This document shows positions 1 to 24,191 of a stretch of DNA of 64,000 nucleotides, piece after piece. This stretch comes from Paragordius varius. Taxonomy: Eukaryota; Animalia; Nematomorpha. Within the stretch, counting starts at the first letter, position 1; each line of letters starts with the position of its first letter. The notes under the pieces were generated by a model. The model was not told the origin of the DNA. It saw only the letters and a program-made list of their open reading frames with translations, and made no database searches. Made by a program: the position numbers and the translations under genes. The stretch is from NCBI GenBank assembly GCA_964247055.1, contig OZ176055.1, positions 8,804,001 to 8,868,000 on the forward strand, in the 5' to 3' direction.

Positions 1-442
1 TTTCTAATTCTAACACTTTGATCTATATTACATAGAAAATATAATTATTTTTTCTATCTATTTTACCGTTAACATTTCATTAAATAAATTTTTAAGAGTA
101 ATCTAGGGTTTAATTTGTAAAAAAGATATGATAAAATATTTTGTCTTACCATATTTATTTTATCATTTTTTCGAAAATACCATTTGTATCCAATAAGTTA
201 ACAGCTGATTTTAACAAAAAAGTTTTATTTTAGCTAAAAACCATATAAATTTTTTATTTTCAAGCTTTATATGCAATGCGAAAACCCCCAAATAATATTT
301 GCAAACAAAATGTTTAATGTGTTATAATTTTCATATTTTTCGATATTGTTGCAAAAAGATGCACATTTAAGCCAAATATCATATACGTTTTTTGAAATAT
401 ATTTAAAATGGAAATCACCCCCAGAGCATTCAAATAATATAC

Positions 443-1115
443 CTGTGTTTCCATTTCCAACATTTTAGCTTGGTGCATGGTTAAATTGGTTAAATTAATT
501 TCCATATTCCGTTGATATAGGGTAATGTACAAGGATTGTAGGGATGAAAGTATGGATTGAATTTTGTCGTTTATAATTTTTGATGTGGAATACATATGAT
601 GATAGTTTTCATCTAAAGTTTCTGTGGTTTGAAAAAATATTTTGATTTACAATCTTTTAAGTAATTAATGATTTTACAAAGAATATATATGTATTAGGAT
701 ATTGAAATTTTTTGCTGGGATCTATGATGGCTACCTTTTGTCAATAATATCATAAATTTAAAGGCTATAAAAAACAGGAAAGTAAAACCTACGACTCATT
801 TTTCAGAGATCGAAAGAGAACTAGTTTCCCTTTGTAACATAGTAAAAAAATTTTTTTGTAAAGGTCTGCATTCATATGAAATTTTCTTCCACTGATTTTT
901 CAATTATACTTTAATCTATATATTTATAAAAATGGAAAATGCTGGCTTTGTGATCTGGTACCGGAAAACCGGTAGACACATTCAAATCCAAACTTCGAAA
1001 AAATATAATCATTAATGAATGCCCCGACAATAGCTTTGCACTTTTTTTGAAATAGTCCCCCCCAGAAGTCCGAAGGACTTCCTCGCGCTGCTACGCAGCA
1101 CGAGATTTACGCTAG

Positions 1116-1156
<41 letters not shown>

Positions 1157-4100
1157 GTTTGTTTTGCCTACAAATAATATTTTTGTTTCAGCTTTTTCGT
1201 TTTTATTTGTATAATTTAATCGAGAAGGCATTGTTCTTGTAATTAATTATTTCCGATAAGCAAAATATTCCAATAAAAGGTCAGAAGACAGTATTTTTTA
1301 TTTTGTTTCAATTAGTAAAATATATAAAAGTATTTAATTAAAATGGAAAAATGAAACATGCCAAGAATAGTTAATAAACAGATTAATTAATATTTCCTAA
1401 CAATTACTTAAATAAACACGTATAAAACTAAAATTTAAACGTGGGTTAGAGTTTCTTAAAACTCATGCATATACCCTATTTTTATCTCAGGATATACTCA
1501 AATGATCAAAATTATCACATTAAAATGGTTTAACCTAGATTTTTACAAAAAAATTTATATGTAATATACCTTTAATATTTGTTGTCGAGATTTTCGTTTC
1601 TAATGAATCGCATCTTTTTGCAATTTGACTATTTTTAACTTTGGCTGACCAAATAAGATGGGCCAAATTTTTGGTGACCTCTTTTGCCAACGTTATAATT
1701 TCTTCAAATTTTATGGACGTGTCCACCTTCTTATCTGTTAGTTTGTGCACATTTTCGCTACCAAGAAAATTTTTTTAAAAAATAAAGATAAAATCCTTTT
1801 TAAGGTCTTTTAAATATTATTCTATAAAAAATATATATTAATTTGTACATTACCTTAAAATACCCCAGAGAAAAGGTGATTTTAATTAAAATATGAAGTT
1901 ATGCGGGCAAAGCGTAAAATATATGGACAAATATTTTTTGTTTTCTAAAAGAAAACAAAATTCTTCTAAATTGAAATATAATATATTTAAAAATTTTCAC
2001 AGTATTAAGTAGAATTGTATATTGGTAACACAATCAGTTATATATTTGACATTAATTAAATAAGCTATAAAGAAAATAATAAGGTTTAAAAAAGTATGGC
2101 TGTCTTTTATTCAAAAAAAAATTTGTTTTATTACGTTTTATCCTACGTTTCATATCAATTTTTAGATGGAAATTAAAACAAAGAAAAAAAAATTTACAAA
2201 TGTAAAAATCATGATATTTCCAAAATTTAAACACAAATAACTAAAATATATAAATTTCTTTAAAATATCTTTTAAAATATTAATACATGAAAAATGTTGC
2301 ACTAATCCCGACAATTTTAGCAGCTGAAAAGAATCCTTGATTCCATTTATCACCTCTGTAATAAAATTTGATAGTTGGCTGTTTGCTATTGTCATTCATT
2401 TGCGCTTCACCATTGTTAATGTTATTGATAATAAAATCTGGTATTTTATTTTTTTCAAGCTGATATAGGGTGTTTTGAAACTTTGCAGCTTGTTCAATAA
2501 ACAATTTGACATTCTAATAAAAAAATTACTAATTTATAAATATCAAAAATTTTTTATTTAATTCATAATTAATACAGATTATTGCGCTATTGCTCATATA
2601 AACAAGTGGAAAGAAAGTACAATCATTAAACATAAATTACAATATAATTAGAATACATAATCTTTAATAAATGAAAAAACACAAATATTTTATAAAAAAC
2701 ATTTTCATTTTATTTAACCATTTATGTTAATAAATGTAGAATCACCAATTTTAAATTACAATCACATTTGAAATTAATTAATTTCCAAAGCGAAAAATTA
2801 AAATTGTGAAACATTGTGATATTTAAACAATTCATCTATAATAATTAAATGATGATAGCATCCTCTATTTAAACCAGGGATCTTCGAGGGACACATTAGT
2901 AAAATATTCTGGTGAAAATTTTTTTAGATTTGACCTGTAATGCAAAACTCTACTATTTATTTCACCAATTTTTCCTAGTACATTGCAAAATGGAGAGATT
3001 TATTTAAGAAAATAATGATATTTTCCCGCGTATGCCGGACACCTCGTGATTTAAACAAAGCTAAAAATATACTTTATAATTATTTAACAAAAATTATAAA
3101 CATAAAAAATTTTGTACATTATTTTCAAACATACCTGCATTAATATTAAAGTTGAGGGGACTCCATCCGACAACCTCTCAAAACAACTTCTTAAACACCT
3201 AAAACCATTTGCGCACAAAACAAGCTCATCCGTTAAAAACAGTTCCGATTTTATTTCCAAAATTAAAAATTTACAAATTCAAGACACAGACCTCTTAGTA
3301 ACACTAGATGTAGAATCACTCTTTACAAAAATACCCAAATCAGAAATTATGGCTATAATAAACAATTTTACACAAACAGGTCTTAATCCTGATATACCAA
3401 AATTGATCCGGATATGTCTATATAATACATATTTTGTTTTCAATAACGAGTTTTACCTTAAAAACAATGGTACACCAATGGGACTAAGCATATCACCAAT
3501 CCTAGCAGATATCTATATGGAAAACCTGGAAAAACAGATATTTAACAGTTCCGAATTTCTCCCTACCATATGGCTACGTTATGTTAATGACATATTTGTT
3601 ATATGGCCCCACGGAGAAGACAGGTTACGTAATTTTTTTGATCATATAAACAAAATGAATAAAAATATTAATTTTACCATGGAATACAATAATACCTCTA
3701 TAAGTTTTTTAGATACATACATTACCAAAACACCCGATGGCCATCTCAATCACACGATCTATCGCAAACCAACCCACACCAACCTCTACCTAAACGCTCA
3801 CTCACACCACCACCCAGCTCAAAAACACTCAGTTATTAAAACACTCATCCATAGAGCCTATGACCTGACTAGCATCTCTAACCACAGAATTATCAAATCT
3901 CAAACATACGTTCCAACGAAATGGCTACTCCAAACAACTTTTTAATAAAATTCTTCACAAAACCTCAAATAAAAAAGATAACAATTTTGTATCCACAGCC
4001 ACCTTACCTTTCATTAATAATGTTACCACCAAAATCGGTAATATTCTCAATAAATTTAATATCCGTACAGTGTATAAGCCAATGACAAAACTGATCAACC

Positions 4101-7100
4101 TAATCAAATACAAAGATCCGATACCCAAGAACAGACTACCTGGTATATACAAGGCCACATGTTCATGTGAAAGCGTCTATATAGGTGAAAGTGGTAGAAG
4201 TATAGACGTCCGTTTACGTGAACACTCCCAATACATTCGTCTTAATAAACCGACCTCAGGTTTATCTGAACACGTTTGCAAGGAAGGACACTTCATTGCG
4301 GACACCAAGGTGATTACAAATATAGAAAACTACAACAAGCGTCTCATACGCGAGTCAATAGAAATTAAGAAAAACAATGCATCACTTAATAGGGACGATG
4401 GCCTAATATTGTCTCCTATTTGGAATTATATATTAATAGAATAACAATATCACTTTAATCAATCCACTATAATTATCACACATCCATAACACTTATCATA
4501 TTTATGTCTTTGATAATGTTGCAAAGGTAATTGATTTTTTCCAATATACAATAATTTTTAATGTTACTGGTTTTTTCAACAATTACCTATATCACACTAT
4601 ATAAGGCATCTTATTACGTTACAATTCATTTAATATTTTTTCGATAAAGACTTTACTATTAAAGTCGAAAATTAAAATATATATTTATATTTGTACGCAT
4701 TTCAGCTTAATTTTTTTTAATAAATACCTGCATTAATGTTGTAGCTAATTCCAACAATTTTTTATCATCCATATTGTAGGAAGGGACCTTGATAAGCAAC
4801 GAAAGTTTTTGTTCCAAATGTTGACTAGATTGACTAATTTTAGCGTATAACTCTTCAATCTCCATATCTAATTTTGCTAATGGAAAAAAATACGGAAATT
4901 TTATTTAAGAATATCATTTAACCCCTAAACAATTCAAATTCACCCTTGAATGAAAATTCACCCTAAAAATAAATTGTCTGTTTTGGGGCTAATATAACTC
5001 ATCATTAATATCAATTAAATTATTTCTTTAAAAGTATAGTTTATTATTTTTTCAGTCCTATGTTAAGTTTAAAAATTTTCTTTTTTTTATAAAATATAAA
5101 TAATTATTTATATTCAATAGCACATTTATAGGGTAAATTTGAATTGTCCCAGAAGATTTTAATTTGTTTAAAGGTGATTTTTATTGTTCAAAGGTTAATT
5201 TCAGGTGTAAATGGTGTGTCAAGTTTTAATGACATATTTTTATTATTGGTTTCAGCTATGTTTTTGATAAACTTTAAATTACAATAAAAGTATAACCAAA
5301 TAAAGTATCAGTGTAATGAAAAAAATCATATAAATAATGAAAAGCACTTATGTTTTCTTTTTGGCTTCATAAAAAAATTTATGATTCTAATTTAAGTTGT
5401 ATTATTATGTAGATATAATTACAATATAAACTTTTTGCGAGTAATTTATTAAGAATTACATTGATTCGTTAAATGATGATCCCAAAAGCTAGATTATTTT
5501 TAGTGCTATTTTCCTTAATTTCATATAAATTATTATCATAAAAAACAAAAAATTCTAAACCTATTTCTATTTTTTGAAAATCTCATCCTATATGTGGTGA
5601 GTAAATTCATATTATTGACCTACCTTCATTTTCTACTAAAGTCTCATTAGGTCCTTCAACTTGAATTTGGGTTAATATCCCATTATCCTGATTTTGAGGA
5701 TTAAAATCATTATGTGCATTCATCATTATTTCCTGAATAACTTTATTAAATTGATCGATAGATTCTTGTAGTGTGGCATTAAACATTTTCCACGGTCCAC
5801 ATATCATATAATTTTGTGTTGTCCCCATTGATATAAGGGTTTTAATTCCATTTTCCATAGTTTTTACCACATTTTTTGCTACTTTAACGATGTTTTCGTA
5901 ATCCTGTTTATTAGGAAAAATCCTAGAAGAATCAAAAACGGTAGAAATATGTTGAGATTTATCATTATTATCTTCAGTGAGTTCAAGATTGACCATTTCA
6001 AAGTCCTCATTAATATTATGATCTTTTTCGTCTCCAAATTGAGTTATATAATTGTTGAGGATGGTACATATGAATTGAACCTATTAAAATATATTTAAAA
6101 GAGATTTTAGCATACTACATTGGAGAATAAGATTTCAAGTAATCAAAGTAAATTATAGGCTAAATAAGAATATATGCTCAAAAAAAACACATATATATGA
6201 GTTTTTATATTTACCAATTGAATTATGAACACTTCTAAATAATTAAAACTTTAACAAAACAATCGTTTAATGTTAATTTATAAAAAATTAATGACGTATA
6301 CGAATATAAAAAATATTTATTTCAGAAAAAAATAAAATTAAATAACTATAAACAAATGTATGTTGAACAACAACTAGTTTTTTAAACCTTGGCATTTTAT
6401 ATAATTACCGTTTCAAAATAAAGGAATAAAGATGAGCTTGTAAAACACTCAATTATATAATAAAAATTGAAATTATATAGTTTATTGATAATCATAATTA
6501 TTAAAATTTAGCTATTTTTGTAAAACATTGTCTTTTAGTTTTAAAGTTTTTATGATTTCTTTTTATAAATTTTCTTTTTCTTATATATACTACTTACTTT
6601 AAAGTTTATGGTTAAAAGACGGTAACAATAAGTTAACAAATTGTCTAAAAAAGATGACATTCCGTTTTCACTATAATTGTTGTTTGTTTTCATTTCAGAA
6701 TTGAGATTTGCATCATTCTTAGAGAACAGTGTTGAATTATTCATAAATTTAGATATACTTTCTATTAAAGATTCGCATAAAACTAAATCCAAATTAGGTA
6801 ATTGGCTTAATTTTAAATACATGATATATAATTGATCATGGTTGATATTATTTTTGTAGCTATATGTTATATTATCGCCTGTGGAATCGTAAAACATTTG
6901 ACTAGATTGAGTGAGTTGATTGAGTATGCTTTGTAGGAATGTATCTTAAAGTTTGAAAAAATGGGTTTAAAAAATTTAAAATTTATTCGAAATCAAAAAC
7001 TTAATCAAAAAATAATTAAGGAATCCAATATTTTATAAAAATAAAATAAAACAATATTTACGTAAAAAATTTAATAAAAAATATTAAGGTAAAAATTATT

Positions 7101-10100
7101 CAAAACCAAAAACTTAACTAAAAATTCTAGATTTTATAAAGTATCTTAAAATAAAACAATATTTAGGTAAAAATTATAAACATAATTTAAACATATTTAA
7201 AATTTAGTTGAATATGGAAAAATTAACGAAAAATAATTATAAAATAAATATATATATTTAGGAAACAATTAAAAAAAGCTAAAAATTTATTTAAAATTGC
7301 ATATAAACAAAAAAATATATGAAAGAGCTCACTAAGGTAAGTTATTATATAGGGCGTTTCATTAAAACCGCTAAAATTTAATGGTAAATTGGATTGTGTT
7401 GATTGATCTTGTCGCGTACTATTTTGCTATAATTCAATCAAAAAAGTAATAATTAATATTGAAATTTTGAATAAAAGCTTTATAAAATATGTTTTTTTAA
7501 CACTGAATATTTTTTATAATAATATTGATAAAAATTTACTTTTAAAATAAAATATAGAAAAGTTTGTAAAAAAATTTTTTTAAAATAAAGTATTAAATCA
7601 TAAAAATTAACTTTCAACAATTTGAAATGAGTATTGCGTAAATTGTCATACATTCCCTTCAACGTGTCATATCGATATTTGTAATTGTCGTATAAATCTT
7701 TGCAATATAAGAAGAAAAAAACATAAAATTGATTTTAAAAGCATAGCAACTAGGAATAGCACCCGGGAAAACTAATGTTATTAAAAAAAATTTAGATTAA
7801 TCATGGTCAACCATTTTTTAAAAATGAAATTTATTTCATTTTATATTTTGGGATGTTATTAGATATACTAGCTGCACTACTTCAAGAGTGTCCTTGAACA
7901 CTTTAAGTTGGTCTTTGAAATCAAGTTGGTGCTTGAACATTTCATGTTAGTCCTTTGACTTTTTTGTTTTGTTTTTAACTTTTAACGATCAAATCATGTA
8001 TCATTCATCTATTTTATCATTTTTAACCTATTTTCTTGATTTAACCAAATTTTTAAATCACCTTTGATCATTCAAAAACTGTATATCTCTATTAAGCTTT
8101 TAAAAAATATATTAATTTTAATGAGATAAAAATATAAGTTTTCTGGGTTATTAGTTACCAATTTTCGTTGAAAACATTTATAATTAATAATATTTTTGAC
8201 TTGAAAAAAATTAGTTGGAAACAAAAAATTGGTTTTTTAACCAAAATATTAATTTTAAATGAATAAATATATATCATAAATCAAAAATTAGGTTAAATAA
8301 TAATAATAAAATAAAAAATTTTTAAATCCAAAATCAATTTTAAGAACCAACTAGTGTTTAAGGACCAACTTGAAGCGTTCGAGGACACTCTTTAAGTGTA
8401 AATGGTATAAGGTAAAAACAACCTTTATAACGAGTATCCTCTTTTTGTGCCAATGAGGGATTATTCAACAATTGGATTAGGGAATCGGTCGTATTTACGC
8501 CGACATCAAGCGAAATTTTCCTCAGTTTACAATCATTCTTATCTAATTTAAAGAATAAAAATAAATTTTAATATAAATTAAATTGTATAACTTACTTATA
8601 AAATTGTAAAAATTAGATAAAACTACCAAATATTAAATTAATTTTATCATAAATTTATTAATTTTAATTGGACTTTGATTGGGTCTAACCAGTTATGTTT
8701 TAATAATGTAAGATCGTTTTGCAACAATAACAAATTAAAGAATTAGATCTTAATGACTTTTAATTTAAATATATAAAACGGAAAGGTAAAAAATATGAAT
8801 TTAATGCAAAAATTGGTTTGCTAATTATCATATATAATTAAAATTAATAGATAGAATAAAATCAATTTGAGTAGTTAATTTTGTTATGTTCTATTTAGTT
8901 AGGATTGTTTAAATTTTTGGTATAATTAACTAGTTTTAACCGCGAATAACTATATTATTACGGAAAAACCGGTCAATATTATTACGGAAAAACCTCAAAA
9001 AACCTAGCCCCACATTTAATTTTTTTACCATTTTAGTTTTAATACTCAATCCCTAAAATATATTTATATTATTTTATTAAAACCTTCTTCTTTACTATAA
9101 CCATTTTCCGATAAAGTATCATTGTTGGAAATTGTTTCGTTATCAGAATTCTTGGAATTATTTGATGAGATTGATTTTGTCGTAACAACAGACGGAATAA
9201 TAAAATCAGTTTTAGCGATTCCATTATGGAAATAGGGTTGTTTCATAAGCTCTTCATCATCATAATCAGCATTTTCCTCATTAAATTTTTGAGATTCCTA
9301 GTGTAAAAAGTTAAAATTATAAACAAAAAATATGTAAATGTTAAACTCGTAAAAATTAGATTTTTATGATTTTTTATTCACAACTAATTGATAAAATAAA
9401 TTTTTTTACATTTTTAAACTATGTACATAATATCTATATTTTTGTCATAATGAAAGCCTTGTTAAAAAAATATTTTCTGTGTTTAGTAGAATAAATATCA
9501 ATTTTATAAAAATTTTACGATTTAATTTTTTAGTTTTATTTTACATTTTCGATAACTTGTAGTAATCGAAAATTAATGCATAACTTTAAAATAATTTCCA
9601 ATTATTGTTGGAATTAATAATTCCAATATTAAAAAAAATTAGGGATACGTTTTTACGATTATACGGTAATTTTTGTCTGTTGTTATATACCATTTAAAGT
9701 TCAAATTCACTCTTGGCCAATTCAAATTTTCCCTAAAATAAATTATGTGTTTTATAAAATAAAAAATTACCCATGTTTTTTTTTATTTTTAAAAAATGAT
9801 ATTTTGTTCTGAAAAATAATAAACTATGTAATGATAGGTTATATTAGCCCGAAAACACATATTTTATTTTTAGGGTGAATTTGAATTGTTCGAGGGTGAA
9901 TTTGAATTGTCCAAGGGTGAATTTGAATTTAAAATGGTATAATAAAAACCTTTATACCAATCAATGGTACTTAATACTTTTTGTAGCCAAAAACAATTAG
10001 ATAAAATAAAAATGTCCATAAATTTAATTATTTTGAAAGCTAATAATTGCGTTGATAAAAATATAATTGATAATTATGAAATTATGGATCTAAATCAAGC

Positions 10101-11944
10101 ATAAAAACCAACAAATTACTGATTTACTAGGGTGTTGATTTTGTGTTGGTAAAAGTATAGAAGTAAGCAGAGTTATATGTGGATTATCATTGGAGCTTTT
10201 GGAAGTGGTCATATTGTCATCAGAAACAGCTGTTAAACAAAAAAATATGTTTAAAACAATGTCATAATTGATTAATATTCTTTTTCCGTAAATTGTGATA
10301 CATTTTATTTTAAATAATAAAAATATTTCAATCCCATTTTTCAATTTTGTATAAATAAATCAAATATTAAAAAACAGAGCATAAATTGTCAATTAAATAT
10401 TAATACTATTATGAAAACCGTGTAAGGTATCAATTGAAAACCTTACACCATAATTTAATTTTTAAAATAACTATTTTAAGTATACCATTTGGAATTCAAA
10501 TTCACCCTTGAACATTTCAAATTCACCCTAAAAATAAATTAGTTTTCGGGCTAATAAAACTTATCATTAATATAAAATATATTCTTATGGCATTGTTTTT
10601 TATTTGTCAATATAGAAAATTTCATAATTTAAAAAATATAAAAAAATATAGGTAATTTTTAACTTTAAAAAACACATAATTCATTTTAGGGTGAATTTAA
10701 ATTGTTCAAGGGTAAATTTGAACTGTAAATGGTATATAAATCTCAAAAATTTCAATATTTTTATATCATATATACTAACATTGTTGATCTGAAACAGATA
10801 ATGTATCATTCTGTAAACTGTATTCCATTAAAGTTTCTTGGGGTAATCGTTCGTATATATGGGCACCCCCCACATCATTAAAATCAGATTTTATTCCCGG
10901 GTTGCATTTTGAAATTAATTGACTTTGTTCATATAGTGTTTTATTCAAACCAATAAAATTGTCCTTATAATTAATGGCATTTGAGAGTTTTGTTGAAATG
11001 TTAGAAGAAGGAGTCGTCTCAGAATACGTTGGAAGCGATGATTTGCGCAATAAAAAATTGGGCATCTAAAAAAATTTATGCAAATAAAAACACATATTGT
11101 AAATTTTTTAGATATTAAAATGAAATCTAAAAATACAGTAAAAATTAAAATTATACGGACAAAACGTGAAAATATAAAGACACATAATATTTTTTTCTAA
11201 AAGACTACCATACTTTTTTAATCTTTATTTTTAATAATTATAATTCATTGTTTTAAACTACAAAGTATAATATAGAAATGTAAATTGGTAACATCATTAA
11301 TTGTATATTTTACAAATATAATTTCTTTTTTATAGGATAAATTAAGTTTAAAAAAAGTATGGTTGTCTTTTGAAAAAAAATATTTGTCTTTATAATTTTA
11401 TATTTTGTCCGTATAATTTTAATTTTTACTGTATAAACCATTCACATTTTTAATTTACTCTTAAACATTTCAAATAACCACCCTAAAAATATGTGTTTCT
11501 GAATCATAACTCAGGATTAAAAATATATTATCATTTTTTAATTTTATTACCATAGTTTGTAAATTAAATACTCGTGAATTTTAATTGTTGTTTATGATAA
11601 TAAAAAGATTAATATAATAATTAAAACAAGGACCTGATATACTTACTCATCCAAAATAAATTTAACGAATTTTCGAAAATACATATGTATAATATAAAGT
11701 ATGATATAATTGGATCAATATATAATTTATCAGGTGATTTTTCAATTGTTTAAGGGTTTTTAAATCTAAATTGTATATATTAATATTATCTTTGTAAAAA
11801 TTAATAATTTTATCCATAAAACAATATAAAATCAAAGGATAAAACTAATTCAAAAAAAATATCTGACCTCCGTTAATTGAGGGATGGCCACCAAATTTTT
11901 CAAATACTGTAATCGAATACAATTTTGGAAAAATTTCTTTAATC

Positions 11945-11975
<31 letters not shown>

Positions 11976-14585
11976 TATAATACAGTAATTAAAATTATGA
12001 CAGGTAAAACGCATAAAAAACATAAAGACAAAACTATTTTATTTAAAAAACCAATTTTTCGATTTTAATATTTTTTCTATATAACCTCTAAGTATTAAAA
12101 ATATGAAAATGATAATAATTTGAATCTTTATTCCTTAATTTGCAGCCAAAAAATTAGCAATTTTTAAATAAATTATGATTTAAAAAAATATGGTTGTCCT
12201 AATTTTTAGGAAAAAATATTTGTCTCCTAATTTTTATACGTTTTAACTTTATAATTTAAATTTATACCATAAAACTATTATTGAATTAGGTTAAATTAAA
12301 AAAATTATTTGTAATAAGTATCAGAGTAAAATTAAACTTACATGTTGAAACATTGTTCAAATCGTTTTCTATGTCCTACCAAAAATTCATGATCAAGTCC
12401 TAAAACAAATATATAAAAATTTTCAAATTAAAGCGATATATAAAAGATTTATTTAAAGAAAAATATGTAATTAAAAACGTAACCGTTCTTGTGGAATCGT
12501 AATAAGAATTAACTTTTTTTCAAAAAAACGCTTTAAAACCAAAGAATGGTTGCAAAAAATAGTTTGAGAGTTTCAAAAAAAAACTCTTGTATATATCTAT
12601 GCTCATTTATTTGGAACATTAAATATGCATTTTTTTATTTTAATAATATAATAATAAAAATTAAATTTCGAGCGATAAGTTTATGTAATTTATTCAGTAA
12701 AAATTGATATTATACGGACAAAAAATAAAAATATAAAGCAAAAATTATTTTTCAAAAGACAAACCATACTATTTTAAACCCTATTTTATCCTATAAAAAT
12801 CATTTAATTACAATTGTAAAATATATACTGTATTGTGATACCAATTTACATCTCTAATATACTTTGTTGACAAAATTCAGATGTATATAAAATAATCAAC
12901 ATTTAATAAAAAGTGTGGTTGTCTTTTAAAAAAAATTTTCTTTATATTTTTACGTTTTCTCCGTAAAATTTCAATTTTTACTGTACGTTTATTTTTGGTA
13001 AATATTAAAAAAATTAGACAACTGTTATCGATTAACGCCACAAACAATAATTTATGGTAAAACATTCAAAAATATGTCATATATAAAATTATCAGTTTTC
13101 GAATCTTAAGTCTTCGTTTTTATATATATGTATGCCAAGAAACTCTAAAAATACTCTTCATGTCACTAAAACCGTAATAAACAATTGTTTTTATCCTAAA
13201 TCCATTATGTAAAAAGTATTGTTGATATATAATTCCATCAATAAAATTATTCTTTTGTCATGTTTTATAGACATCCCATTATATATTTGCAAAAGAACTC
13301 TAATACCGTAATCCCCAAAACGAAAGCAGCTTGGAAAGCATCGAAATTCGTGATTGAATATTATAAAAAATTTAAAACTCTTTAAAAACTTCAATTAATG
13401 CGCCGTACCTTACCGAATAGAGCATATATTTAAGTTGTGTTAATTTAAATAATTTCGAAATTCGAATCGCGTGCCAAAAAATGTTAAATTCATAAGATAA
13501 GGAGTGCCATTCAAATGTTTTATAGCCCATATACTTTTGCAACACCCCACGCCCCATGTAAGACCAAAAAATAGTATATAAATTTAAAAAAACTCAAACC
13601 CATATTTATTTTTAAGTGAAGGAGGGTATCAAAAATATTTATTTTTCAATTTTTCTATAAAGATAAATTTATTAATGATTATGAAAAAAAAGTTTATAAT
13701 CAAAATAAAATTTTTATATAATAAGTTAAACATCAAAAATGATTCTCTATTCCAATTCTCCAAAAATATATCCTAAAAATTAGGATAAAAAGAAAGGGGT
13801 GGTGTTTAAAAAAGTTATGACTTACTGTTATGTAATTTTCGCATAATATAGACGATATGATCATAAAGCAAAACGGCTTCTTGAATACACGGGACCAGGG
13901 GTTGAATACGCAGTTGTCCAGCACTTGTTAAGGAATTGAGACTTTAAAAAAATGTATAATAATATCAAATTTCTGGGAATAATTATTTTCAATACTAAAT
14001 AAATTTACCCTTGAACATTACAAATTCATTCTTGCCATTTCAAATTTACCCTTGAACATTTCAAGTTAACCCTAAACTATATTATAAGCTCTTGCCCTTT
14101 TTTAACTAATAATTGATATGATATTTTTTATAACTTGATTCTATCATTTTTTCTTGTATTAAACTTATATCAAAAAATATGGGTAATTTTCAAAAACGTA
14201 ATTTCTAGTTAGGTATTTAAAATGTTTAAATGTAATTTTAAATGTTCAAGAGTGAATTATTTACAGGGTATTTTGTAATATAATGTTAAGCTCTTTTAAC
14301 TATAGACACTTATACATTATATTCAAGTCACCCTTGAGATCTAAATTTATCACTTCAAACATTAGAAATTAACGCTAAAAAATATATTATGTATTTAAAT
14401 AAAATATCCATTTTAGGCAAAATTTATGATTATTAATGGAAAAAAATAAATGAATGAACAAAATATAGTCTTTTGGAAAAACTAATATTTTATCTCAATT
14501 ATGAGTTGTTTAACCAAAAAAACATACATTTTATTTGGGTGAATTTGAAACGTTCAAGGGTTGAATTTTATTAAAGAGTGAAAAG

Positions 14586-14620
<35 letters not shown>

Positions 14621-15309
14621 AATATCAGATATGATAATTTTAAAAGTATACTTATTTATTTCTAGGGATTGAAAGATGGCAGATTGCAATCGCAATATGT
14701 CTTCGAGATAATCTAGTAAAACTGTTGAAACTTGAAAGTAAGCATCATCATCCCCATAAATTTTATCAAGTTCGGTTTGTGTCAAAATTAAATTGTTGGG
14801 AAAATGTGGATTCTTGCATATTATAAATGTACAAAATTTACCTTGTTATGAAATTCGAGTTTGTTGCTAATCAAAATACAAAAATAATTGATCAATATGC
14901 TAAAATCATCTTTCAAATGACTCCATAACTTGCCCAAATCTTTTATACGCGATTTAAATTTATATGATATTTCCAAAGTCTATAGATAATATATAATGTT
15001 ATTAATTACATTCCGTTGACCATCTCTTAAAAGTTTGTATAAAACGTATAAAAATTTCCAGCATACAATTTGATTTCCTTGTAATGGCATATTTTCCATA
15101 ACAACTTTCCAAAATAATTCACATCCAACCCCGACATAAGATCCGATTATAATGGCTTAAATTTATAGATATGGAGTAAAACCTCTGACATGTTTCTCCT
15201 TTGCTGGACCTTCCTGTAAGCTCAGTCCTTTAAGGATACTGCTAACCTATGTATCGTAATAAAAGTTTTGACTAACTTGATGATCGTAAAATTGTTTTTG
15301 CTTAGACAT
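443..15309 (-). CDS. HIP1: Huntingtin-interacting protein 1 / HIP1R / Sla2 family (ANTH + I/LWEQ talin-like domain), 20 coding exons, about 1083 aa in window, final exon unresolved
   Basis: Exons (minus, GT-AG, phases all compatible): 15277-15309, 15183-15246, 15010-15155, 14842-14979, 14652-14812, 13826-13941, 12342-12399, 11868-11943, 10780-11065, 10120-10229, 9084-9297, 8423-8542, 7612-7697, 7333-7426, 6598-6944, 5624-6080, 4728-4876, 2287-2513, 1570-1757, 443-621. ANTH motifs: K-X9-KEKH (ILKGLSLQEGPAKEKHVR), CWKFLYVLYKLLRDG, EFHNK|NPHFP, TSAGQLRIQPL, GHRKRF, LQYLKNLVAIPQL. I/LWEQ motifs: FYYRGDKWNQGFFSAAKIVG, KFEEIITLAKEV, SAKVK, LTMHQAKMLEMETQ. In-frame TGA just upstream of the ATG at 15309. 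Cannot distinguish HIP1 from HIP1R. Confidence 0.92.
915..1115 (+). mobile_element. Non-autonomous Helitron (about 200 bp) in a HIP1 intron
   Basis: Begins TC(TATATATTTATAAAAATG) after an A; ends with hairpin CTCGCGCTGC-TAC-GCAGCACGAG, a short spacer, then CTAG followed by T. No TSD; A|T insertion is the Helitron signature. Confidence 0.85.
1885..2165. mobile_element. MITE family B, degenerate copy
   Basis: Recognisable arms (AAATATGAAGTTATGCGGGCAAAGCGTAAAA ... AAAAAGTATGGCTGTCTTT); ends approximate. Confidence 0.55.
3145..4444 (+). pseudogene. Disrupted Penelope RT-endonuclease ORF
   Basis: ORFs 3112-3945 and 4070-4444 join into one polyprotein with a single frameshift near 3880 (alternate frame TELSNLKHTFQRNGYSK...IRTVYKPMTK runs into the GIY-YIG ORF). 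Catalytic YxDD reads YVND. Confidence 0.85.
4641..4670 (+). ncRNA. Degenerate hammerhead-ribozyme-like motif at the Penelope 3' end
   Basis: TCGATAAA-GACTTT-ACTATT-AAAGTC-GAAA: perfect 6-bp stem II followed by GAAA. The 5' core differs from CTGATGA at 3 positions; stems I/III not clearly formed. Confidence 0.4.
4912..5216. mobile_element. MITE family A
   Basis: TIRs related to TATACCATTTACAATTCAAATTCACCC...GGGTGAATTTGAATTGTAAATGGTATA with ~21-bp subterminal repeats. Confidence 0.75.
7864..8409. mobile_element. MITE, family A-related variant (longer, different subrepeats)
   Basis: Inverted arms TTCAAGAGTGTCCTTGAAC...AAGTTGGTC / GACCAACTT...GAGGACACTCTTTAAGTGTAAATGGTATA; same terminal AAATGGTATA as family A. 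Confidence 0.75.
9686..9941. mobile_element. MITE family A
   Basis: TATACCATTTAAAGTTCAAATTCAC ... GTGAATTTGAATTTAAAATGGTATA. Confidence 0.85.
10481..10736. mobile_element. MITE family A
   Basis: TATACCATTTGGAATTCAAATTCACCC ... GGGTAAATTTGAACTGTAAATGGTATA. Confidence 0.85.
11134..11433. mobile_element. MITE family B (TA-flanked, CAGT-ended, Tc1/mariner-like ends)
   Basis: TACAGTAAAAATTAAAATTATACGGACAAAACG ... TTTTGTCCGTATAATTTTAATTTTTACTGTA; long TIRs, 300 bp. Confidence 0.9.
11981..12271. mobile_element. MITE family B (diverged)
   Basis: TACAGTAATTAAAATTAT... with internal family-B motifs; right arm degenerate. Confidence 0.7.
12694..12985. mobile_element. MITE family B
   Basis: CAGTAAAAATTGATATTATACGGACAAAA ... 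CCGTAAAATTTCAATTTTTACTGTA. Confidence 0.85.
14000..14570. mobile_element. Two degenerate MITE family A copies (about 14000-14280 and 14325-14570)
   Basis: AAATTTACCCTTGAACAT / TTCAAGAGTGAATT and TTCAAGTCACCCTTGAG / GGGTGAATTTGAAACGTTCAAGGG arms; ends approximate. Confidence 0.6.
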
Positions 15310-18300
15310 TGGATGTAATCAGCATGTTTCAACATTCATACTAATATTCGTGTGCGAGGAGAAAATTTAGGGTGGTAAAAGTATTATGATGCTAATTCAC
15401 CAATCTACTATAATAAATAAAATACGCTAATTTGCAAATTATGTCATCAGTTAATGGATTTCTCATTTATTTGTAAAATTTAACAGACATCGTTTATTTG
15501 AAACAGATAATAACCTTCCCTAAAATTTTCACGTAGTTTTATATCTTAAAGCAATTTAAAATTTAAAAATCTTTAAGAGGATTTTAGGTTGGCCTAATTT
15601 TTAACTATATTAGCTTTTTAGGCAACTTCAAAATAAATGTTTTTTATACCAGAATAATTGTCAAAAATGCTCATCTCAAACTTTTTGCCGACATTTTATC
15701 TATAAATTTTTTTAATCTCTTATGCACAGTTAAATAAGTGTATATTATGGCTTAATAAAACTTCAAGCTTTCAGGCTACATTTTAAGCATGAATGATTTT
15801 AAAATGGACTGCTCGCTTCAATCGCGTTTTGGAGCTGTCCCAATTTTTATCTAACTGTAAATATTATGAAAAAATGTATATAATAGAAAGCAATGTATAT
15901 AATTAAATATTAATAATAAACTATTAAAAAGATCTGTACAACTGCCCCAATATATAAACTAGGACAAGAAAAGTGAAAAGGTGAGGAAGTTCTAGCGATA
16001 TATTTAGATAAATATTTTTATTTGCCATCGAACTTTTGTATATTCGGTAAACTGCATAAAGCCGTACAATATTAAAGTTGGCACATTGCATTTCAATTTT
16101 AACACTTTAATACCTTTTTATTTTCTGTAGAATAGGCGATATTAGGGTAGTTTTGTACACCAGGCCTTAAACTAAATAAGGCCCTTTTGCTTTCGTTGAT
16201 ATTTGAGTATGAAAAATGTTCGCCTGCTTAGGAAAGCTTACATTTTAACCCTTTTTAACTTCCAGAGTTAAAATTGCAGTGATTCGATCCTAAATCGAAA
16301 CCGCATGGAAACAAAACCTCTAAAATTTATGCAGGAACCGCGTCTGTTTTGTTAAAACCACCCGGTATGGTTACTAATCCTCGAAAACCACACCAGTTTC
16401 AGTTACAAAATTTAAAAAACCATTCCGTTTAAAATTATAAGGAAAGTCTATTTAAACTGTTTATGTGGGGTTCCCGCACCTCAAAAACAGGTGACTCCTA
16501 TTTTTTCTTTAAAAAGTTAAATATTTTGTTTAACACTTTATGACCTTTTAGGGGAGTTTAATACCCCAGGGCTATTTAATATATCATAAAATAATATGAA
16601 ATTAAAATTCTCACCTCAATCGCCGCCTTTTCTTTAAGTTTTTTTGAATTGTCAATACAACACGCAAATCTACGTATATTATGGTTAAAAATATAATAGC
16701 ATGGGAAAGCTTACTAATTATAATTTATCAGCAAATTTTTGATATTTTGTGATTAATATAAGCTGTTCGTTTCAAATGTTTTGGTGCTATCTTAATCTGG
16801 TACTCTTTCATAAAAAAATTTATGAATTCTATGTTTTATTTATTATAATAAGAGAAGAGTGTGTAATAGTTGAATTTTAACCAAAGCAGCTTTCAAAACA
16901 GCAGTTTTTTACTTCAAGCTCTGGGGTAGAAAACCCCAATATGTCATCGCGAACAAAAAATAAAAATCTAATGGTTTGTAAATATTACTTTTGCCAAGAA
17001 TAATGTGTAGATATTTTATATTGACAAAATATATTCCAAATAAATAGATGGCGTATCAAAGACATTATATAATATTTCATGCGATTAAATTATTATTTGT
17101 GAGCAAACACTCCTTATTTACGCCTTTAAAATTAAAGATTATATTATAAAACTAAATTATCTGAAAATCAAAATAGACAAGACTTATCAAAACATTCCCA
17201 AGTCAATCTTACACATCCAGTCAACACCACGAGGAGGTGGTTAATAAAATTTTTGTACCTATTATTATACTCATTAATTTAAGTAATATTACAAATTCAT
17301 GAATCATAAATTCATTAGAGCACAAATAAGTTCCTATTCTAGCCGTAATCACAAAATATAATGTGAGGACATATTTTGCACTTTGACGAAGTACAATAAA
17401 ACATACTTTGCCTGTTATTACACCATCGGTGTGGTATATTACACAGTTTCACAAAAAAATATCCTGATGATATATATATATATATATATATGTATATATT
17501 TATCAGGATCATCATGGTGCTTTTGGTTTTAACCTTTACGAGTTATTAGAGAAAGTTAATACCTTTTTGTGGTAAGTGTTCCGTAAAAAATTGCAAAAGG
17601 TGTGCAATAGATTTTTTGGACAATGCTAAAAGCCTTATATAAAAAAGTATCACTAAAATATAACATAAACTACAAATAATAAGCAAAAACAATATTTTTA
17701 AAAATTTTAAATTTTTAGATGTGGGCTCTGATAAGCGTTACACCGTTTCCATCATCTTTCAAAATAGTTATAAGTACGCTTCCACAAAACATCCCAAATT
17801 TGTTTATGCAAAAAAATAAGAAAACTAATAAAAACTAAGGTTTAGGAAATATAATAATTAATATCATACTTCCCACCAAATAAGTATAAAAACACCTAAT
17901 TTTACGAAAAAAGATTATTTCGAATCTTATGCCATATATAATAAATTTTATATTATATTTTAAGGGTGACAATTTTCTATAAAATTTTCCGTTTGATAAC
18001 TATAACAAAAAATAAACTTTCTAATCTGATCAATATTTATTAAAATATCATGAATTAATTTTGTTAATTTTAAATTTTGAGGCACCTCTTTTTGCGGAAG
18101 CCCTGAGTGAAAGAGACATTATCTGAATATTACGGTGGACCGAAGTTTATAGTTTCGCCAATGTGCAAAAGGCTGAATCCTAGTTTGTATAATTTGGGCA
18201 GAAAATAAAACATTAACCAAAGGAAAATAGGCCAATCTTAGTTTTTACCTCAAAATGAACCATTTCTTTACAAATTATGGGGTTATTTTTACGGATAAAA

Positions 18301-20281
18301 TTTTTGAATAAATAAAGGGTAATTAATATATATTCATAAATAATCAATTTTTTTTATTTCAAAAAGCAGTACAAAAGTGGGCGCAGTACAGTCGCAGTTT
18401 TTCTGAAAATCCAACGTAAAACTATAAAAACTGCCATTTATTTCAATAATTTTGGCTAGTTAAATGGCGCAATTCGGAAATTAAATTTTACTTAGATTTC
18501 TTAAAATTTAGTATTTGAAATTTCTTGCCAGTTAATGAAATATTTTAGGTGGCCGCATGTTATACACCCCTACTTTAGAGTTCTGTATAAAAATATTAAT
18601 ATATATGAACAGAAATCGTTGATCTGGAAAAAAAATATAATTAAATATTTCAGTTATTTAGTCATTATTATTAACACTTGGATAAAACACAGTCATTTCA
18701 GTCTTTCGATTCAAATTGGGTCGTTGGATACCCCAGGCCTGTTTAAAACTAAAAATTTAAACAATATTTGAATGAATTGAAACCATGGCTATCTATGCAC
18801 TTGTATAACAGTAATGAACCGAATACTTGATATTACTTAGTATAACCCAAAGGTAGAAATTTAGCCAACATAAGATATGTGCATAAGTTAAATATGTAAT
18901 TTATGCAAAATTTACCACTTTTTCTGTTTCTATTAATGCAAAATGTGATTTAATAAACTTAATTATAGCCTTGGAATCAAATAAACACGATATTTTGCAA
19001 AAATGTTGTGACATAAAAATGGCGTCGAAGTAGTTAGATACGGAATTTTTTTAAACTAAATTTTATTTTAATATTTTGGCTTATTTTTTATTTCGATAGA
19101 TTCATAAATTTAAATTGGTACCGTTAGATACCCCGATTCGAATCGTAATTTTAATACTTTGGGCCTGGAGTTTTGAAATATATGGATCCAATATGAGAAT
19201 ATAAATTTATGGATGGTATAATATATTAAAATCATATTATCCAGTTAGCCATTGTATAAAAATAAATTTCTTGGTGCTCATATTTTATTAGTACATATGT
19301 GATTTTTGTTATCTTAAATCAACCGCATGGCATATTGGTTATGTGTGTCTTTTAAACTAGTAAATTGAAAAAAAATGTATATAAACCGGTAAGGTTATTC
19401 TTTTTTAGTATATATATATATATATATATCATAAATAAATAAAAAATCGAAAATACTGCTTAAATCAATCCTTTATTATGCAAATTAACAATCCTATACC
19501 ATTAAATGTATTTTCACTGTATATAAAATATTATAAATATACATGAGGTGTTATAGAAGCTTAAATAGGGATAACAATAAAAATTTGGCTAAAACAAAAT
19601 TATTTATAATGAGATTTATGTTTAAACTAAAAGATCATAATAACTTCTAATTATGTAGCTCTGAAATCCGATAGAAACAAACGGCTGTGATAAAACATAA
19701 TTGATTGCATATATAATAAAATTTTAATAATTTATTTTTATATGCCAGTATTTGTATCGTAAAAATCTGGTATTATAAGTTTACATGATGCTTTAAATTT
19801 AATATTTTTATAAATAATTAAATATTAACCCCCTAAGAAATTGTCTATATTTAAATTTGGCTGAATTTATAGTTTTAAGATATTCGAATTTGATACTAAT
19901 TTGGGGAATTTACCCAAAAGGAAAAAAGGAGGTGTCATACGAGTACAAAAATTAAAATTAATCATATACTCTTGGTCCTGCAATGAAATGAGTCAAAATT
20001 TTATCCTTGAACTTGGTATAAATTATTTCTTTAACTCCGAAATATATTTTAATTGTCATTCCTGATTATATGATAAATGAAACTCGTAATATTTATTATT
20101 TAAGACTTAAAGTGAGATTCATTCGTTTAATGGATGCCATCTAATTACAATCCCACAAAACTTTATAGAGAGTTACCTGTTTTAAAACTGGAAATAACAT
20201 TAAAAATATGAAAAATTGATGTTTAAAAATTAAATAATATTTGGATATTTTAGAACAAAATATACGTATTTTTATAGAACA

Positions 20282-21690
20282 CTAGCTGGCCCTGTCACAT
20301 TTCGCTGTGACGCAGTCTGACTGATAATTTTTCTTAATATTTGCAATAAATAGAATGGAGATAAAAAATTAATAAAAAACATATTGAATAAAAATAATTT
20401 AAATTATTTACCACAGATTTTTCCATAGGCTTAAATATTTTTTAATTATTAAACCTATTTAAACTGTCCCTTATTTAAGTTAATTTTCAACTGTCATTGG
20501 TATTTTAACATTTTTGTTTAATCATGTTTAAAAGTTTTATTTTGAAATTGTGTTGACACAGCTGGGATCAAGGGATATATAAAAAGTAAATCATTTGTGG
20601 TTCCTTTTTAAAAAGAACAATGATATTATACAAATTTCCCAGAAATGTGTTTAACTGAACTCAAATGGCCTCTTATGTTTTTCAAAAATTAGCAATAAAA
20701 CCACGCCATTTTTATATGGCGTCTCAGTTTTAAACCAGTAGACCCCTACCCATATATCTATATGGAAAAAGCGCTGAGTTAAATTCTTTACTTTTACAGG
20801 GGAAAATTTTGGAATGATCTTTGATATCATCGTCTCACGGGTTATTAAAATAGCTCAACACTAAATAATCATTATATGATGGCGTATTTTAAGGGCATAA
20901 AGGCCCCATAACGGCTAATAAAAATACGCCTGACTTTTTTACCCAGTTACGAGTAATATTTCAAGCTTTTAATAAGCTCATATAGCTCCGAAACAAAGCA
21001 AAATTAACGGCTAAATTTAGACCGTTGACCTATATTTTTGCTTTGTTAAATATTTTGAGTACCTATTGAACTCATATGGTTTGATAAGTTTTACAAAATT
21101 TAGCTCCAAAACAACGCAATTTATATATAGTGGAGCAATTTTTGGTAGATAGCTCCTAACCCAGGGGCACGCATAAAAAAAGCGTTGGGCAAAATTATTG
21201 TCTTTTAACAGGGAATATCTGAAATCCTTATTAAATTTTTACGGTCTCCTACTCTGGGGAAAAAAATAGATTTAAAAAATTATTTTTGTGGTTTTTTGAC
21301 AATAATGGCATTTTACCAGGGGATAAAAAGAGGGCCTAAATTAAAAATGTGAGCCGACTATAAGTAGCGCATTCGAAAATAAGTAAAAAAAATTATATTT
21401 AAAATTGAATGGTCCATTACGTTTTCTGGAAAATTGTCTAAATGAGGCGGATTTTTGTTGACTTGTTTTAAAAAACAGTCTACACGGGGCAGGCCCGAAC
21501 TGGGGGCCTAATTTAAAAAAAAGGCAAAGCTATTGTCGGGGCATTCATTAATAATTATAGTTTTTTGCATTTGGAAATGGATGCCTAAAATACGAAATTC
21601 GTAAAAACTACACTTTTCAACCAAGATTTAGCATTCTATGGATTTCAGAAATGCAATAGGGAATTTTTTTAGCGAGAGACTTTTAAAGAT
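20282..21690 (-). mobile_element. Larger non-autonomous Helitron related to the 915-1115 copy (5' end approximate)
   Basis: Minus-strand 3' end GTCACA-GCGAAA-TGTGAC hairpin then CAGCTAG|T at 20282; 21495-21590 is the reverse complement of TAATGAATGCCCCGACAATAGCTTTGC seen inside the 915-1115 Helitron. Confidence 0.65.
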
Positions 21691-23969: not shown

Positions 23970-24191
23970 TACAGGGTGCATTTTAAGGGTTGCTTATTTC
24001 ACCTTATAGTTGAGCAATTTAAAACACAGTAGTATATGGAAAAACCATAAAATGTTAAATAACCGATTTTTTCCTTTCTTACATTATTTTGTTTATTTTA
24101 TTCAAATTTTGTTATTATTTACCATAGGCTATTGTGTTGCAAATTGCCCAACTATAGTGTAAAATAAGCAACCATTAAAATGCATACTGTA
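23970..24191. mobile_element. MITE family C (TA-flanked)
   Basis: TACAGGGTGCATTTTAAGGGTTGCTTATTTCACC ... GTAAAATAAGCAACCATTAAAATGCATACTGTA; second copy at 38100-38286. Confidence 0.85.

What the first reader, a model, noticed from the sequence alone, without database searches (positions are those of the whole stretch)
14813..15276. Four consecutive 27-30-nt spliceosomal introns in the HIP1 ANTH domain
Seen (minus strand): 15247-15276 GTTAGTCAAAACTTTTATTACGATACATAG (30 nt); 15156-15182 GTTTTACTCCATATCTATAAATTTAAG (27 nt); 14980-15009 GTAATTAATAACATTATATATTATCTATAG (30 nt); 14813-14841 GTAAATTTTGTACATTTATAATATGCAAG (29 nt). Each contains an in-frame stop if retained, and removal gives seamless HIP1 homology (FYDHQ|VSSILK, KEKHVR|AIIIG, LRDGQRN|TLEIS, EFHNK|NPHFP). 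Known: typical animal minimal introns are about 45-65 nt or longer; sub-35-nt introns as a norm are reported mainly in highly reduced genomes such as dicyemids, ciliates and nucleomorphs. Here they coexist in one gene with kb-scale, MITE-filled introns. Inference: this animal's spliceosome handles both ultra-short and long introns, a possibly undescribed bimodal architecture. Such introns may also be too short to tolerate MITE insertion.
Basis: partly seen in the sequence, partly recalled or inferred. Interest (0 to 1): 0.9.

Follow-up and report, generated by a model that had tools for sequence, protein, structure and literature searches.

The report
Four tiny introns, hairworm HIP1 gene
The first four introns of an ordinary endocytosis gene (HIP1) in this hairworm-like genome are only 27-30 bases long, at the exact codons where a related hairworm has introns of 274-9,312 bases; they are almost certainly real, but their removal from RNA has still not been seen.

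Summary
On the minus strand, four GT..AG segments of 30, 27, 30 and 29 nt interrupt the ANTH-domain part of a HIP1-like gene. Removing them gives exons of 64, 146, 138 and 161 nt. These match, in length and phase, exons 2-5 of the Gordionus HIP1-like gene (XP_065323396.1), whose corresponding introns are 9,312, 1,839, 274 and 371 nt. Three of the four positions also carry introns in Priapulus.

Independent DNA contigs from two samples bridge all four segments without indels, so they are not assembly deletions. Listed variants are 4.3 times denser in the mini-introns than in the flanking exons. Nine of 11 exon variants are synonymous third-position changes.

The same gene continues with introns of 710, 1,426 and 398 nt that carry MITE-like repeats.

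Two things are not shown or not new. No RNA contig covered the locus, so splicing itself is inferred. Clusters of microintrons at gene 5' ends beside kb-scale introns are already published for parasitic flatworms, with modes of 32-37 nt. Introns under 30 bp are published for myxobolid myxozoans and Dicyema.

This scan has already reported the same intron class many times elsewhere in this genome. Verdict: a real feature, and a new lineage for a known kind.

The parts
15277..15309 (-). HIP1-like exon 1 (coding part, 33 nt, starts at the ATG at 15309)
   Evidence: It aligns with the N-terminus of Gordionus P0001.
15247..15276 (-). Mini-intron 1: 30 nt, GT..AG, phase 0, with an in-frame TAG as its last codon
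   Evidence: The orthologous intron is 9,312 nt in Gordionus and 235 nt in Priapulus. X1 contig 15159-15311 bridges it without gaps.
15183..15246 (-). Exon 2, 64 nt
   Evidence: The exon is 64 nt in Gordionus and also in Priapulus.
15156..15182 (-). Mini-intron 2: 27 nt, GT..AG, phase 1, two in-frame stops if retained
   Evidence: The orthologous intron is 1,839 nt in Gordionus and 684 nt in Priapulus. X1 contig 15004-15188 and X4 contig 14891-15264 bridge it with 0 gaps.
15010..15155 (-). Exon 3, 146 nt, ANTH core
   Evidence: Pfam ANTH E 6.1e-5. HIP1R ANTH structure 7OST E 1e-5. 81% identical to Gordionus P0001 residues 39-86. The Gordionus exon is also 146 nt.
14980..15009 (-). Mini-intron 3: 30 nt, GT..AG, phase 0, with an in-frame TAG as its last codon
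   Evidence: The orthologous intron is 274 nt in Gordionus. Priapulus has no intron at this codon; its nearest one lies 19 codons downstream. X4 contig 14891-15264 bridges it with 0 gaps.
14842..14979 (-). Exon 4, 138 nt, ANTH
   Evidence: Pfam ANTH profile 77-121. The Gordionus exon is also 138 nt.
14813..14841 (-). Mini-intron 4: 29 nt, GT..AG, phase 0; retention shifts the frame
   Evidence: The orthologous intron is 371 nt in Gordionus and 170 nt in Priapulus. X1 contig 14647-14949 and X4 contigs 14792-14920 bridge it with 0 gaps.
14652..14812 (-). Exon 5, 161 nt
   Evidence: The Gordionus exon is also 161 nt, phase 2. Three of its four listed variants are synonymous in the frame set by removing the 29-nt intron.
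13942..14651 (-). Intron 5: 710 nt, conventional, carries a high-copy repeat
   Evidence: Word depth above 120,000 at 14000-14113, against about 700 in the exons. Inverted repeat 14043-14077 / 14224-14258.
13826..13941 (-). Exon 6, 116 nt
   Evidence: Same length as in Gordionus.
12400..13825 (-). Intron 6: 1,426 nt, with a MITE-like element at 12695-12983
12342..12399 (-). Exon 7, 58 nt
   Evidence: The exon is 58 nt in Gordionus and in Priapulus.
11944..12341 (-). Intron 7, 398 nt
11868..11943 (-). Exon 8, 76 nt
   Evidence: The exon is 76 nt in Gordionus and in Priapulus.
300..11867 (-). Rest of the gene, with exons located only approximately. Matches to Gordionus P0001 lie at 9258-9103, 7689-7606, 6023-5667, 4880-4674, 2366-2298, 1756-1607 and 583-431. 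The I/LWEQ domain is at the 3' end. Introns here are kb-scale.
   Evidence: tblastn. Pfam I_LWEQ on ORFs 1535-1750 and 314-595. A reverse-transcriptase ORF lies at 3112-3945 on the + strand inside one intron.

Best explanation
These are four genuine U2-type GT-AG spliceosomal introns. They are the first four introns of the single HIP1/HIP1R-type gene (ANTH domain to I/LWEQ domain) of a nematomorph related to, but distinct from, Gordionus. They occupy inherited intron positions, and in this lineage they have collapsed to 27-30 nt. Later introns of the same gene stayed at 0.4-1.4 kb or more and collected transposon debris. I infer that they are removed by intron definition: the two splice sites are paired across the intron itself. 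At this size the 5' splice site, the branch site and the 3' AG must lie within about 30 nt, and there is no room for a polypyrimidine tract. The in-frame stops (three of the four are multiples of three, and each has one) and the frameshift in the 29-nt intron mean that any unspliced message would be truncated and probably degraded. Shown here: the sequence features, the positional orthology, their presence in independent DNA, and relaxed constraint inside the segments against purifying selection in the exons. Inferred: the excision from RNA, the recognition mode, and the direction of change. Shrinkage is favoured because the outgroup Priapulus has 170-684 nt at the three shared positions.
For: (1) Each segment runs from GT to AG, and removing them restores one open frame.
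(2) Window exons 2-8 are 64, 146, 138, 161, 116, 58 and 76 nt. Exons 2-8 of the exactly mapped Gordionus model XP_065323396.1 have the same lengths and phases. Gordionus introns 1-4 are 9,312, 1,839, 274 and 371 nt.
(3) The protein alignment has no gap at any of the four junctions. Identity to Gordionus is 72% over 264 residues. Positions 1, 2 and 4 are shared in phase with Priapulus caudatus.
(4) Pfam ANTH and the solved HIP1R ANTH domain align collinearly across the junctions.
(5) DNA contigs of two samples (X1, X4) bridge every mini-intron with 0 gaps, and no joint skips them.
(6) Among the listed variants, 10 fall in 116 intron nt and 11 in 542 exon nt (odds ratio 4.6, Fisher p = 0.0013). 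Nine of the 11 exon variants are synonymous third-position changes, and the other two are A>V and I>V. No variant touches a GT or an AG.
(7) Mini-intron GC is 13-27%, against 32% in the exons.
(8) The same layout of adjacent, 5'-end microintrons is validated in flatworms (PMC6530080; PMC4040987).
Against: No RNA evidence was obtained. The two runs labelled RNA for the same species label (X8, X10) laid no contig on the stretch, and my only read-laying run is spent. No transcript-derived protein of this organism turned up in the protein collections. Only two of the four mini-introns have a yUnAy-type branch motif at a usable distance from the AG (13 and 11 nt). In the other two the only match lies 6-8 nt from the 5' end. 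The variant table is truncated (55 rows not shown), so the density contrast could be somewhat biased. Introns of 27-30 nt are below the size that vertebrate and yeast spliceosomes are thought to handle (my own knowledge).
Confidence: 0.9

Rival explanations
1. The segments are retained in the message. The locus would then be a decaying pseudogene, or it would encode only a short N-terminal peptide.
For: No RNA was seen. Every segment carries a stop.
Against: The exons are under purifying selection: 9 of 11 listed variants are synonymous, in the frame that exists only after the segments are removed. Exon lengths and phases match Gordionus exactly over seven exons. The ANTH and I/LWEQ domains are both intact. 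No second HIP1 copy was seen in the window.
Confidence: 0.02
2. The short lengths are assembly artefacts: collapsed or deleted longer introns.
For: Gordionus has 274-9,312 nt at the same positions.
Against: Logan contigs, assembled independently from two samples (one about 3% diverged), bridge all four segments with 0 gaps. No loose ends or joints fall there. However, X1 may be the sample the window was assembled from, so it is not necessarily independent support.
Confidence: 0.01
3. The segments are removed, but not by the major spliceosome. One route would be an IRE1/tRNA-ligase type cut, as for the 26-nt XBP1 intron. Another would be excision from somatic DNA, like the short eliminated sequences of ciliates.
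For: The size range resembles both. Adult hairworms are largely gonad, so whole-animal DNA could hide a somatic excised form, and contigs drop rare variants (caveat stated).
Against: All four start with GT and end with AG. All four sit at the exact codon and phase of ordinary long GT-AG introns in Gordionus, and three do so in Priapulus. No DNA joint skips them. An independent removal system landing on inherited spliceosomal positions is not needed to explain any of this.
Confidence: 0.03
4. Real introns, but the cell uses other, more distant splice sites, so the true introns are longer and the exons shorter.
For: The region is AT-rich and full of GT and AG dinucleotides: there are 777 GT..AG pairs of 27-30 nt in the window.
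Against: Any other pairing would delete or add residues relative to Gordionus, Priapulus and arthropod HIP1. Those proteins align without gaps at all four junctions. It would also break the exon-length identity.
Confidence: 0.03

Closest known systems
Flatworm microintrons: Opisthorchis felineus (peak 37 nt), Gyrodactylus salaris (short mode about 32 nt) and tapeworms (PMC6530080, PMC4040987)
   Same: A discrete class of very short GT-AG introns. They lie next to one another, concentrate at the 5' end of genes, are poor in polypyrimidine tract, and share the gene with kb-scale introns in a genome that is not compact. Gene finders with default minimum intron lengths miss them.
   Different: The phylum is different (Ecdysozoa, not Platyhelminthes), so the origin is independent. 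The sizes here are 27-30 nt, below the flatworm modes of 32-37 nt, and this scan's unchecked notes give 20-33 nt for other genes. In flatworms the class is supported by transcriptomes; here no RNA has been seen.
Ultra-short introns of myxobolid myxozoans and Dicyema japonicum (PMC13644364)
   Same: Animal GT-AG introns at or under 30 bp, at conserved positions between conserved exons, with reduced splice-site motifs. All are parasitic lineages.
   Different: In those genomes the median intron is 22-27 bp and the genomes are compact. Here only the 5' introns are tiny, the rest of the gene has introns of 0.4 kb and more, and the DNA is repeat-rich. Two of the four introns here are exactly 30 nt, not under 30.
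Ciliate short introns (my own knowledge, Paramecium; ciliate exceptions are cited in PMC13644364)
   Same: The size range is similar. So is the pattern that introns whose length is a multiple of three carry in-frame stops, which exposes unspliced messages to nonsense-mediated decay.
   Different: Ciliates are unicellular and have uniformly tiny introns. Four introns are far too few to test the 3n/stop rule here.
Gordionus sp. m RMFG-2023 HIP1-like gene (XP_065323396.1, GCA_954871325.2)
   Same: It is the orthologous gene. The first seven intron positions and phases, and the lengths of exons 2-8, are identical.
   Different: All 16 Gordionus introns are 188-9,312 nt and none is a mini-intron. 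The protein is 72% identical over the first 264 residues, so the window comes from a different hairworm lineage.

Membership tests
U2-type GT-AG spliceosomal intron | GT at the 5' end and AG at the 3' end | tested here: met
   All four. No listed variant alters them in two samples.
U2-type GT-AG spliceosomal intron | Interrupts the reading frame, and removal restores a continuous, homologous protein | tested here: met
U2-type GT-AG spliceosomal intron | Same codon and phase as an annotated intron in related species | tested here: met
   Four of four in Gordionus and three of four in Priapulus.
U2-type GT-AG spliceosomal intron | Evolves as non-coding sequence while the flanks evolve as coding sequence | tested here: met
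   Variant density is 8.6% in the introns against 2.0% in the exons. Nine of 11 exon variants are synonymous. The variant list is truncated.
U2-type GT-AG spliceosomal intron | Absent from mature mRNA | not testable with these tools
U2-type GT-AG spliceosomal intron | Branch site and polypyrimidine tract upstream of the AG | tested here: inconclusive
   A yUnAy motif lies 13 and 11 nt from the 3' end in introns 1 and 4, with no suitably placed motif in introns 2 and 3. There is no pyrimidine tract.
[quoted passage not shown] | Length under 30 bp | tested here: inconclusive
   Two of the four qualify (27 and 29 nt). The other two are exactly 30 nt.
[quoted passage not shown] | Genome-wide median intron length under 30 bp in a compact genome | tested here: not met
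   The same gene has introns of 398-1,426 nt and longer, with repeats. A genome-wide histogram was not possible.
Flatworm-type microintron architecture | Microintrons adjacent to one another and at the 5' end of the gene, beside kb-scale introns | tested here: met
   Introns 1-4 are mini and introns 5-7 and later ones are long. Compare PMC6530080.
Flatworm-type microintron architecture | Length mode of 32-37 nt, in Platyhelminthes | tested here: not met
   The lengths are 27-30 nt, and the closest relative by protein is a nematomorph.
HIP1/HIP1R/Sla2 family | N-terminal ANTH domain and C-terminal I/LWEQ (talin-like) domain in one gene | tested here: met
   ANTH. I_LWEQ on ORFs 1535-1750 and 314-595. 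The orthologue P0001 carries both.

The most novel reading that the evidence does not exclude
A hairworm lineage has independently evolved a discrete class of introns of about 20-30 nt at the front of its genes. It did so by collapsing inherited introns that are hundreds to thousands of bases long in its relatives (9,312 nt to 30 nt in this gene), while keeping a large, transposon-rich genome with kb-scale introns elsewhere. This would be a further independent animal origin of introns at or under 30 nt, and the first in Ecdysozoa. It would imply a spliceosome that tolerates a 5' splice site to branch site distance under about 20 nt. It would also mean that gene models, completeness scores and gene-loss claims for hairworm genomes are partly distorted by missed mini-introns.
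Probability: 0.55. Interest if true: 0.7.

Novelty: new member of a known kind. Interest (0 to 1): 0.58.

Why it matters
The lower size limit of animal introns is a live question. A September 2026 survey of 51 animal genomes found introns under 30 bp only in myxobolid myxozoans and Dicyema (PMC13644364). A nematomorph with 27-30-nt introns, at positions where its relatives have up to 9.3 kb, would show two things. Extreme shortening can occur without genome compaction. It can also be confined to the 5' end of genes, as in flatworms, which suggests a general link between cap-proximal position and intron-defined splicing.

There is also a practical point. Default gene finders skip such introns (stated for flatworms in PMC6530080). 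Proteomes and completeness scores for this hairworm would then be understated. No full-length HIP1 of this organism turned up in the protein collections searched.

Tried and rejected
- **RNA evidence.** Two run searches (one search failed as busy) gave only runs of unknown kind, which turned out to be DNA, plus small runs labelled RNA with next to none of the sampled words. Laying X1, X4, X8 and X10 at 85% likeness put no RNA contig on the stretch.
- **Transcript-derived or fragmentary hairworm HIP1 proteins.** P0001:1-190 found only distant arthropod fragments. Residues 1-270 scored within the whole protein found Gordionus itself and then orthologues of about 50% identity. Exon 3 alone found no candidate.
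- **Spliced protein as a query.** Exons were searched separately by reference.
- **Exons 9-17.** Greedy homology-guided mapping failed beyond exon 8 because the middle of the protein is too diverged. Those exons are given only as tblastn matches.
- **Literature.** The Acutogordius/Nectonema genome paper and two flatworm genome papers were not held under the ids I tried. I therefore could not check whether short introns are mentioned there. The Gordionus genome preprint and the Mermithidae/Nematomorpha comparative preprint contain the word 'intron' zero times.
- **Other genes in the window.** The only other gene starts here were not identifiable (no Pfam match), so no window-wide mini-intron census was possible.
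- **U12-type, IRE1-type and DNA-elimination readings.** I considered these and set them aside (see rivals).

Full report
**The observation**

Reading the minus strand from the ATG at 15309 gives five coding pieces. They are separated by GT..AG segments of 30 nt (15276-15247), 27 nt (15182-15156), 30 nt (15009-14980) and 29 nt (14841-14813). If the segments are read through, each introduces a stop. The two 30-nt segments end in an in-frame TAG, the 27-nt one has two stops, and the 29-nt one also shifts the frame.

Spliced, the pieces give one open frame of 180 residues. Pfam ANTH matches exon 3 at profile positions 38-72 and exon 4 at 77-121, in collinear order. Exon 3 aligns over its whole length with residues 60-106 of the solved HIP1R ANTH domain, 7OST.

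The bare motif is not evidence. The window contains 777 GT..AG pairs of 27-30 nt.

**What decides the matter is orthology**

An exhaustive profile-free search with exon 3 found one close relative, P0001 (81% identity, E 9e-20). It is the 1,073-residue HIP1-like protein of Gordionus sp. m RMFG-2023 (XP_065323396.1 / CAK9303752.1), encoded on chromosome OX940787.2 (locus L001).

I mapped P0001 back onto L001 with an exact spliced match, and the translation equals the protein. The gene has 17 exons, and its introns are 188-9,312 nt.

| Gene | Exon 1 | Exons 2-8 (nt) | Introns 1-4 (nt) |
|---|---|---|---|
| Gordionus | 48 | 64, 146, 138, 161, 116, 58, 76 | 9,312, 1,839, 274, 371 |
| Window | 33 | 64, 146, 138, 161, 116, 58, 76 | 30, 27, 30, 29 |

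After removal of the four segments, and with homology-guided mapping of the next three exons, the window's exons 2-8 have the same lengths and the same phases as those of Gordionus. The four mini-introns therefore sit at exactly the codons where Gordionus has its first four introns.

I mapped the Priapulus caudatus orthologue (P0167, locus L002) in the same way. It has introns of 235, 684 and 170 nt at positions 1, 2 and 4, in the same phases. Position 3 is shared only by the two hairworms; the nearest Priapulus intron lies 19 codons downstream. The three-way protein alignment has no gap at any of the four junctions, and the window protein is 72% identical to Gordionus over 264 residues. The long state in the outgroup makes shrinkage in the window's lineage the simplest history. 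That direction of change is an inference.

**Independent DNA and variation**

My single reads call laid Logan contigs of four runs on 14000-15700. X1 and X4, from two samples of one study, turned out to be DNA, because they also cover the introns and the upstream spacer.

Contigs bridge each mini-intron without a gap:
- X1 14647-14949 covers intron 4.
- X1 15004-15188 covers intron 2.
- X1 15159-15311 covers intron 1.
- X4 14891-15264 covers introns 3 and 2.
- X4 14792-14920 covers intron 4.

No joint or loose end falls at these sites. The segments are therefore neither assembly deletions nor visibly excised from DNA. X1 may, however, be the sample the assembly came from.

The listed differences from the window tell the same story:
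- 10 variants lie in the 116 nt of mini-intron and 11 in the 542 nt of exon (8.6% against 2.0%, Fisher p = 0.0013).
- Of the 11 exon variants, 9 are synonymous third-position changes. The other two are A>V and I>V.
- This holds in exon 5 too, whose frame exists only if the 29-nt segment is removed.
- No variant touches a GT or an AG.

One caveat applies: the tool lists only the best-supported differences, and 55 are not shown.

**The rest of the gene**

Introns 5, 6 and 7 are 710, 1,426 and 398 nt. Further matches to P0001 run down to 431, and the I/LWEQ domain lies on ORFs 1535-1750 and 314-595. The gene therefore spans about 15 kb.

The long introns carry repeats:
- Two elements of about 300 nt with terminal inverted repeats of about 60 nt, at 11133-11434 and 12695-12983.
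- A stretch at 14000-14113 whose summed word depth is about 200 times that of the exons.
- A reverse-transcriptase ORF at 3112-3945.

**What is missing**

Splicing was not seen. The two runs labelled RNA for the same species label (X8, X10) laid no contig at 85% likeness. No transcript-derived protein of this organism turned up in the protein collections. Earlier follow-ups of this scan on other parts of the same genome reached the same point: many introns of 20-33 nt at gene 5' ends, a hairworm-like genome, and no RNA. I used their lead on the organism and tested it for this gene.

**Mechanism**

The most likely mechanism is ordinary U2-type splicing by intron definition. The splice sites are GT and AG. 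The first six intron bases are variable (GTTAGT, GTTTTA, GTAATT, GTAAAT), there is no pyrimidine tract, and GC is 13-27%.

A yUnAy branch motif lies 13 and 11 nt from the AG in introns 1 and 4. Introns 2 and 3 have no well-placed one. The branch site is therefore unresolved.

The in-frame stops in the three introns whose length is a multiple of three would expose unspliced messages to nonsense-mediated decay. This parallels what I recall of Paramecium, but four introns cannot test it.

**Comparison with what is known**

A paper of September 2026 surveyed 51 animal genomes and found introns under 30 bp only in myxobolid myxozoans (medians 22-27 bp) and Dicyema japonicum. Both are compact parasitic genomes (PMC13644364).

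The particular layout seen here matches a published description for the liver fluke Opisthorchis felineus: microintrons next to one another, at the 5' end of a gene, poor in polypyrimidine tract, and sharing the gene with introns of kilobases. In that fluke the microintron peak is at 37 nt and the main intron peak at about 3,000 bp. The same paper warns that annotation software with a high minimum intron length misses these introns (PMC6530080). Gyrodactylus has a short mode of about 32 nt that dominates ordinal positions 1-2, and its other introns reach about 20 kb. Tapeworms are cited there as bimodal too (PMC4040987).

The architecture is therefore not undescribed. What appears to be new is the lineage (Nematomorpha, an independent origin within Ecdysozoa), the smaller size, and the contrast with a sister genus (9,312 nt against 30 nt at one position). 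The two hairworm genome preprints I could read never mention introns, and I could not read the Acutogordius/Nectonema paper.

**Verdict**

- Observation: confirmed.
- Probability that these are real spliceosomal introns: about 0.9.
- Novelty: new member of a known kind.
- Interest: moderate to high. It is limited by the flatworm precedent, by the missing RNA, and by two of the four introns being exactly 30 nt rather than below it.

Noticed in passing
window 1607-1756 and 431-583 (minus strand): Gordionus encodes P0001 residues 941-1042 on one 304-nt exon. In the window the matching pieces lie about 1 kb apart, which suggests an extra intron in the I/LWEQ region that Gordionus lacks.
   Followed up: no
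window 14980-15009; L002 exon 3/4 boundary: Intron position 3 is shared by the two hairworms but not by Priapulus, which has a phase-0 intron 19 codons further on. This is either intron sliding or a loss plus a gain.
   Followed up: partly
window 11133-11434 and 12695-12983: Two copies of a MITE-like element of about 300 nt with terminal inverted repeats of about 60 nt (84-89% complementary), in opposite orientation, inside HIP1 introns.
   Followed up: partly
window 14000-14113 and 15653-15700: Summed contig word depth is 120,000-190,000 and 14,000-26,000, against about 700 in the exons. These are very high-copy repeat families that abut the gene.
   Followed up: no
window 3112-3945 (+): A 277-residue ORF with a reverse-transcriptase domain (RVT_1, E 4e-13) inside a HIP1 intron, on the opposite strand.
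   Followed up: partly
window 14647-15562: Contigs of sample S3 (X4) differ from the window by about 3%, and sample S1 (X1) shows two forms upstream of the gene. This is high diversity, or mixed lineages under one species label.
   Followed up: no
window 25990-26670, 26824-27111, 29011-29856 (+): Three long ORFs (226, 95 and 281 residues), rich in Ser, Asn and Thr, on the + strand with no Pfam match. They may be a lineage-specific or fast-evolving gene.
   Followed up: partly
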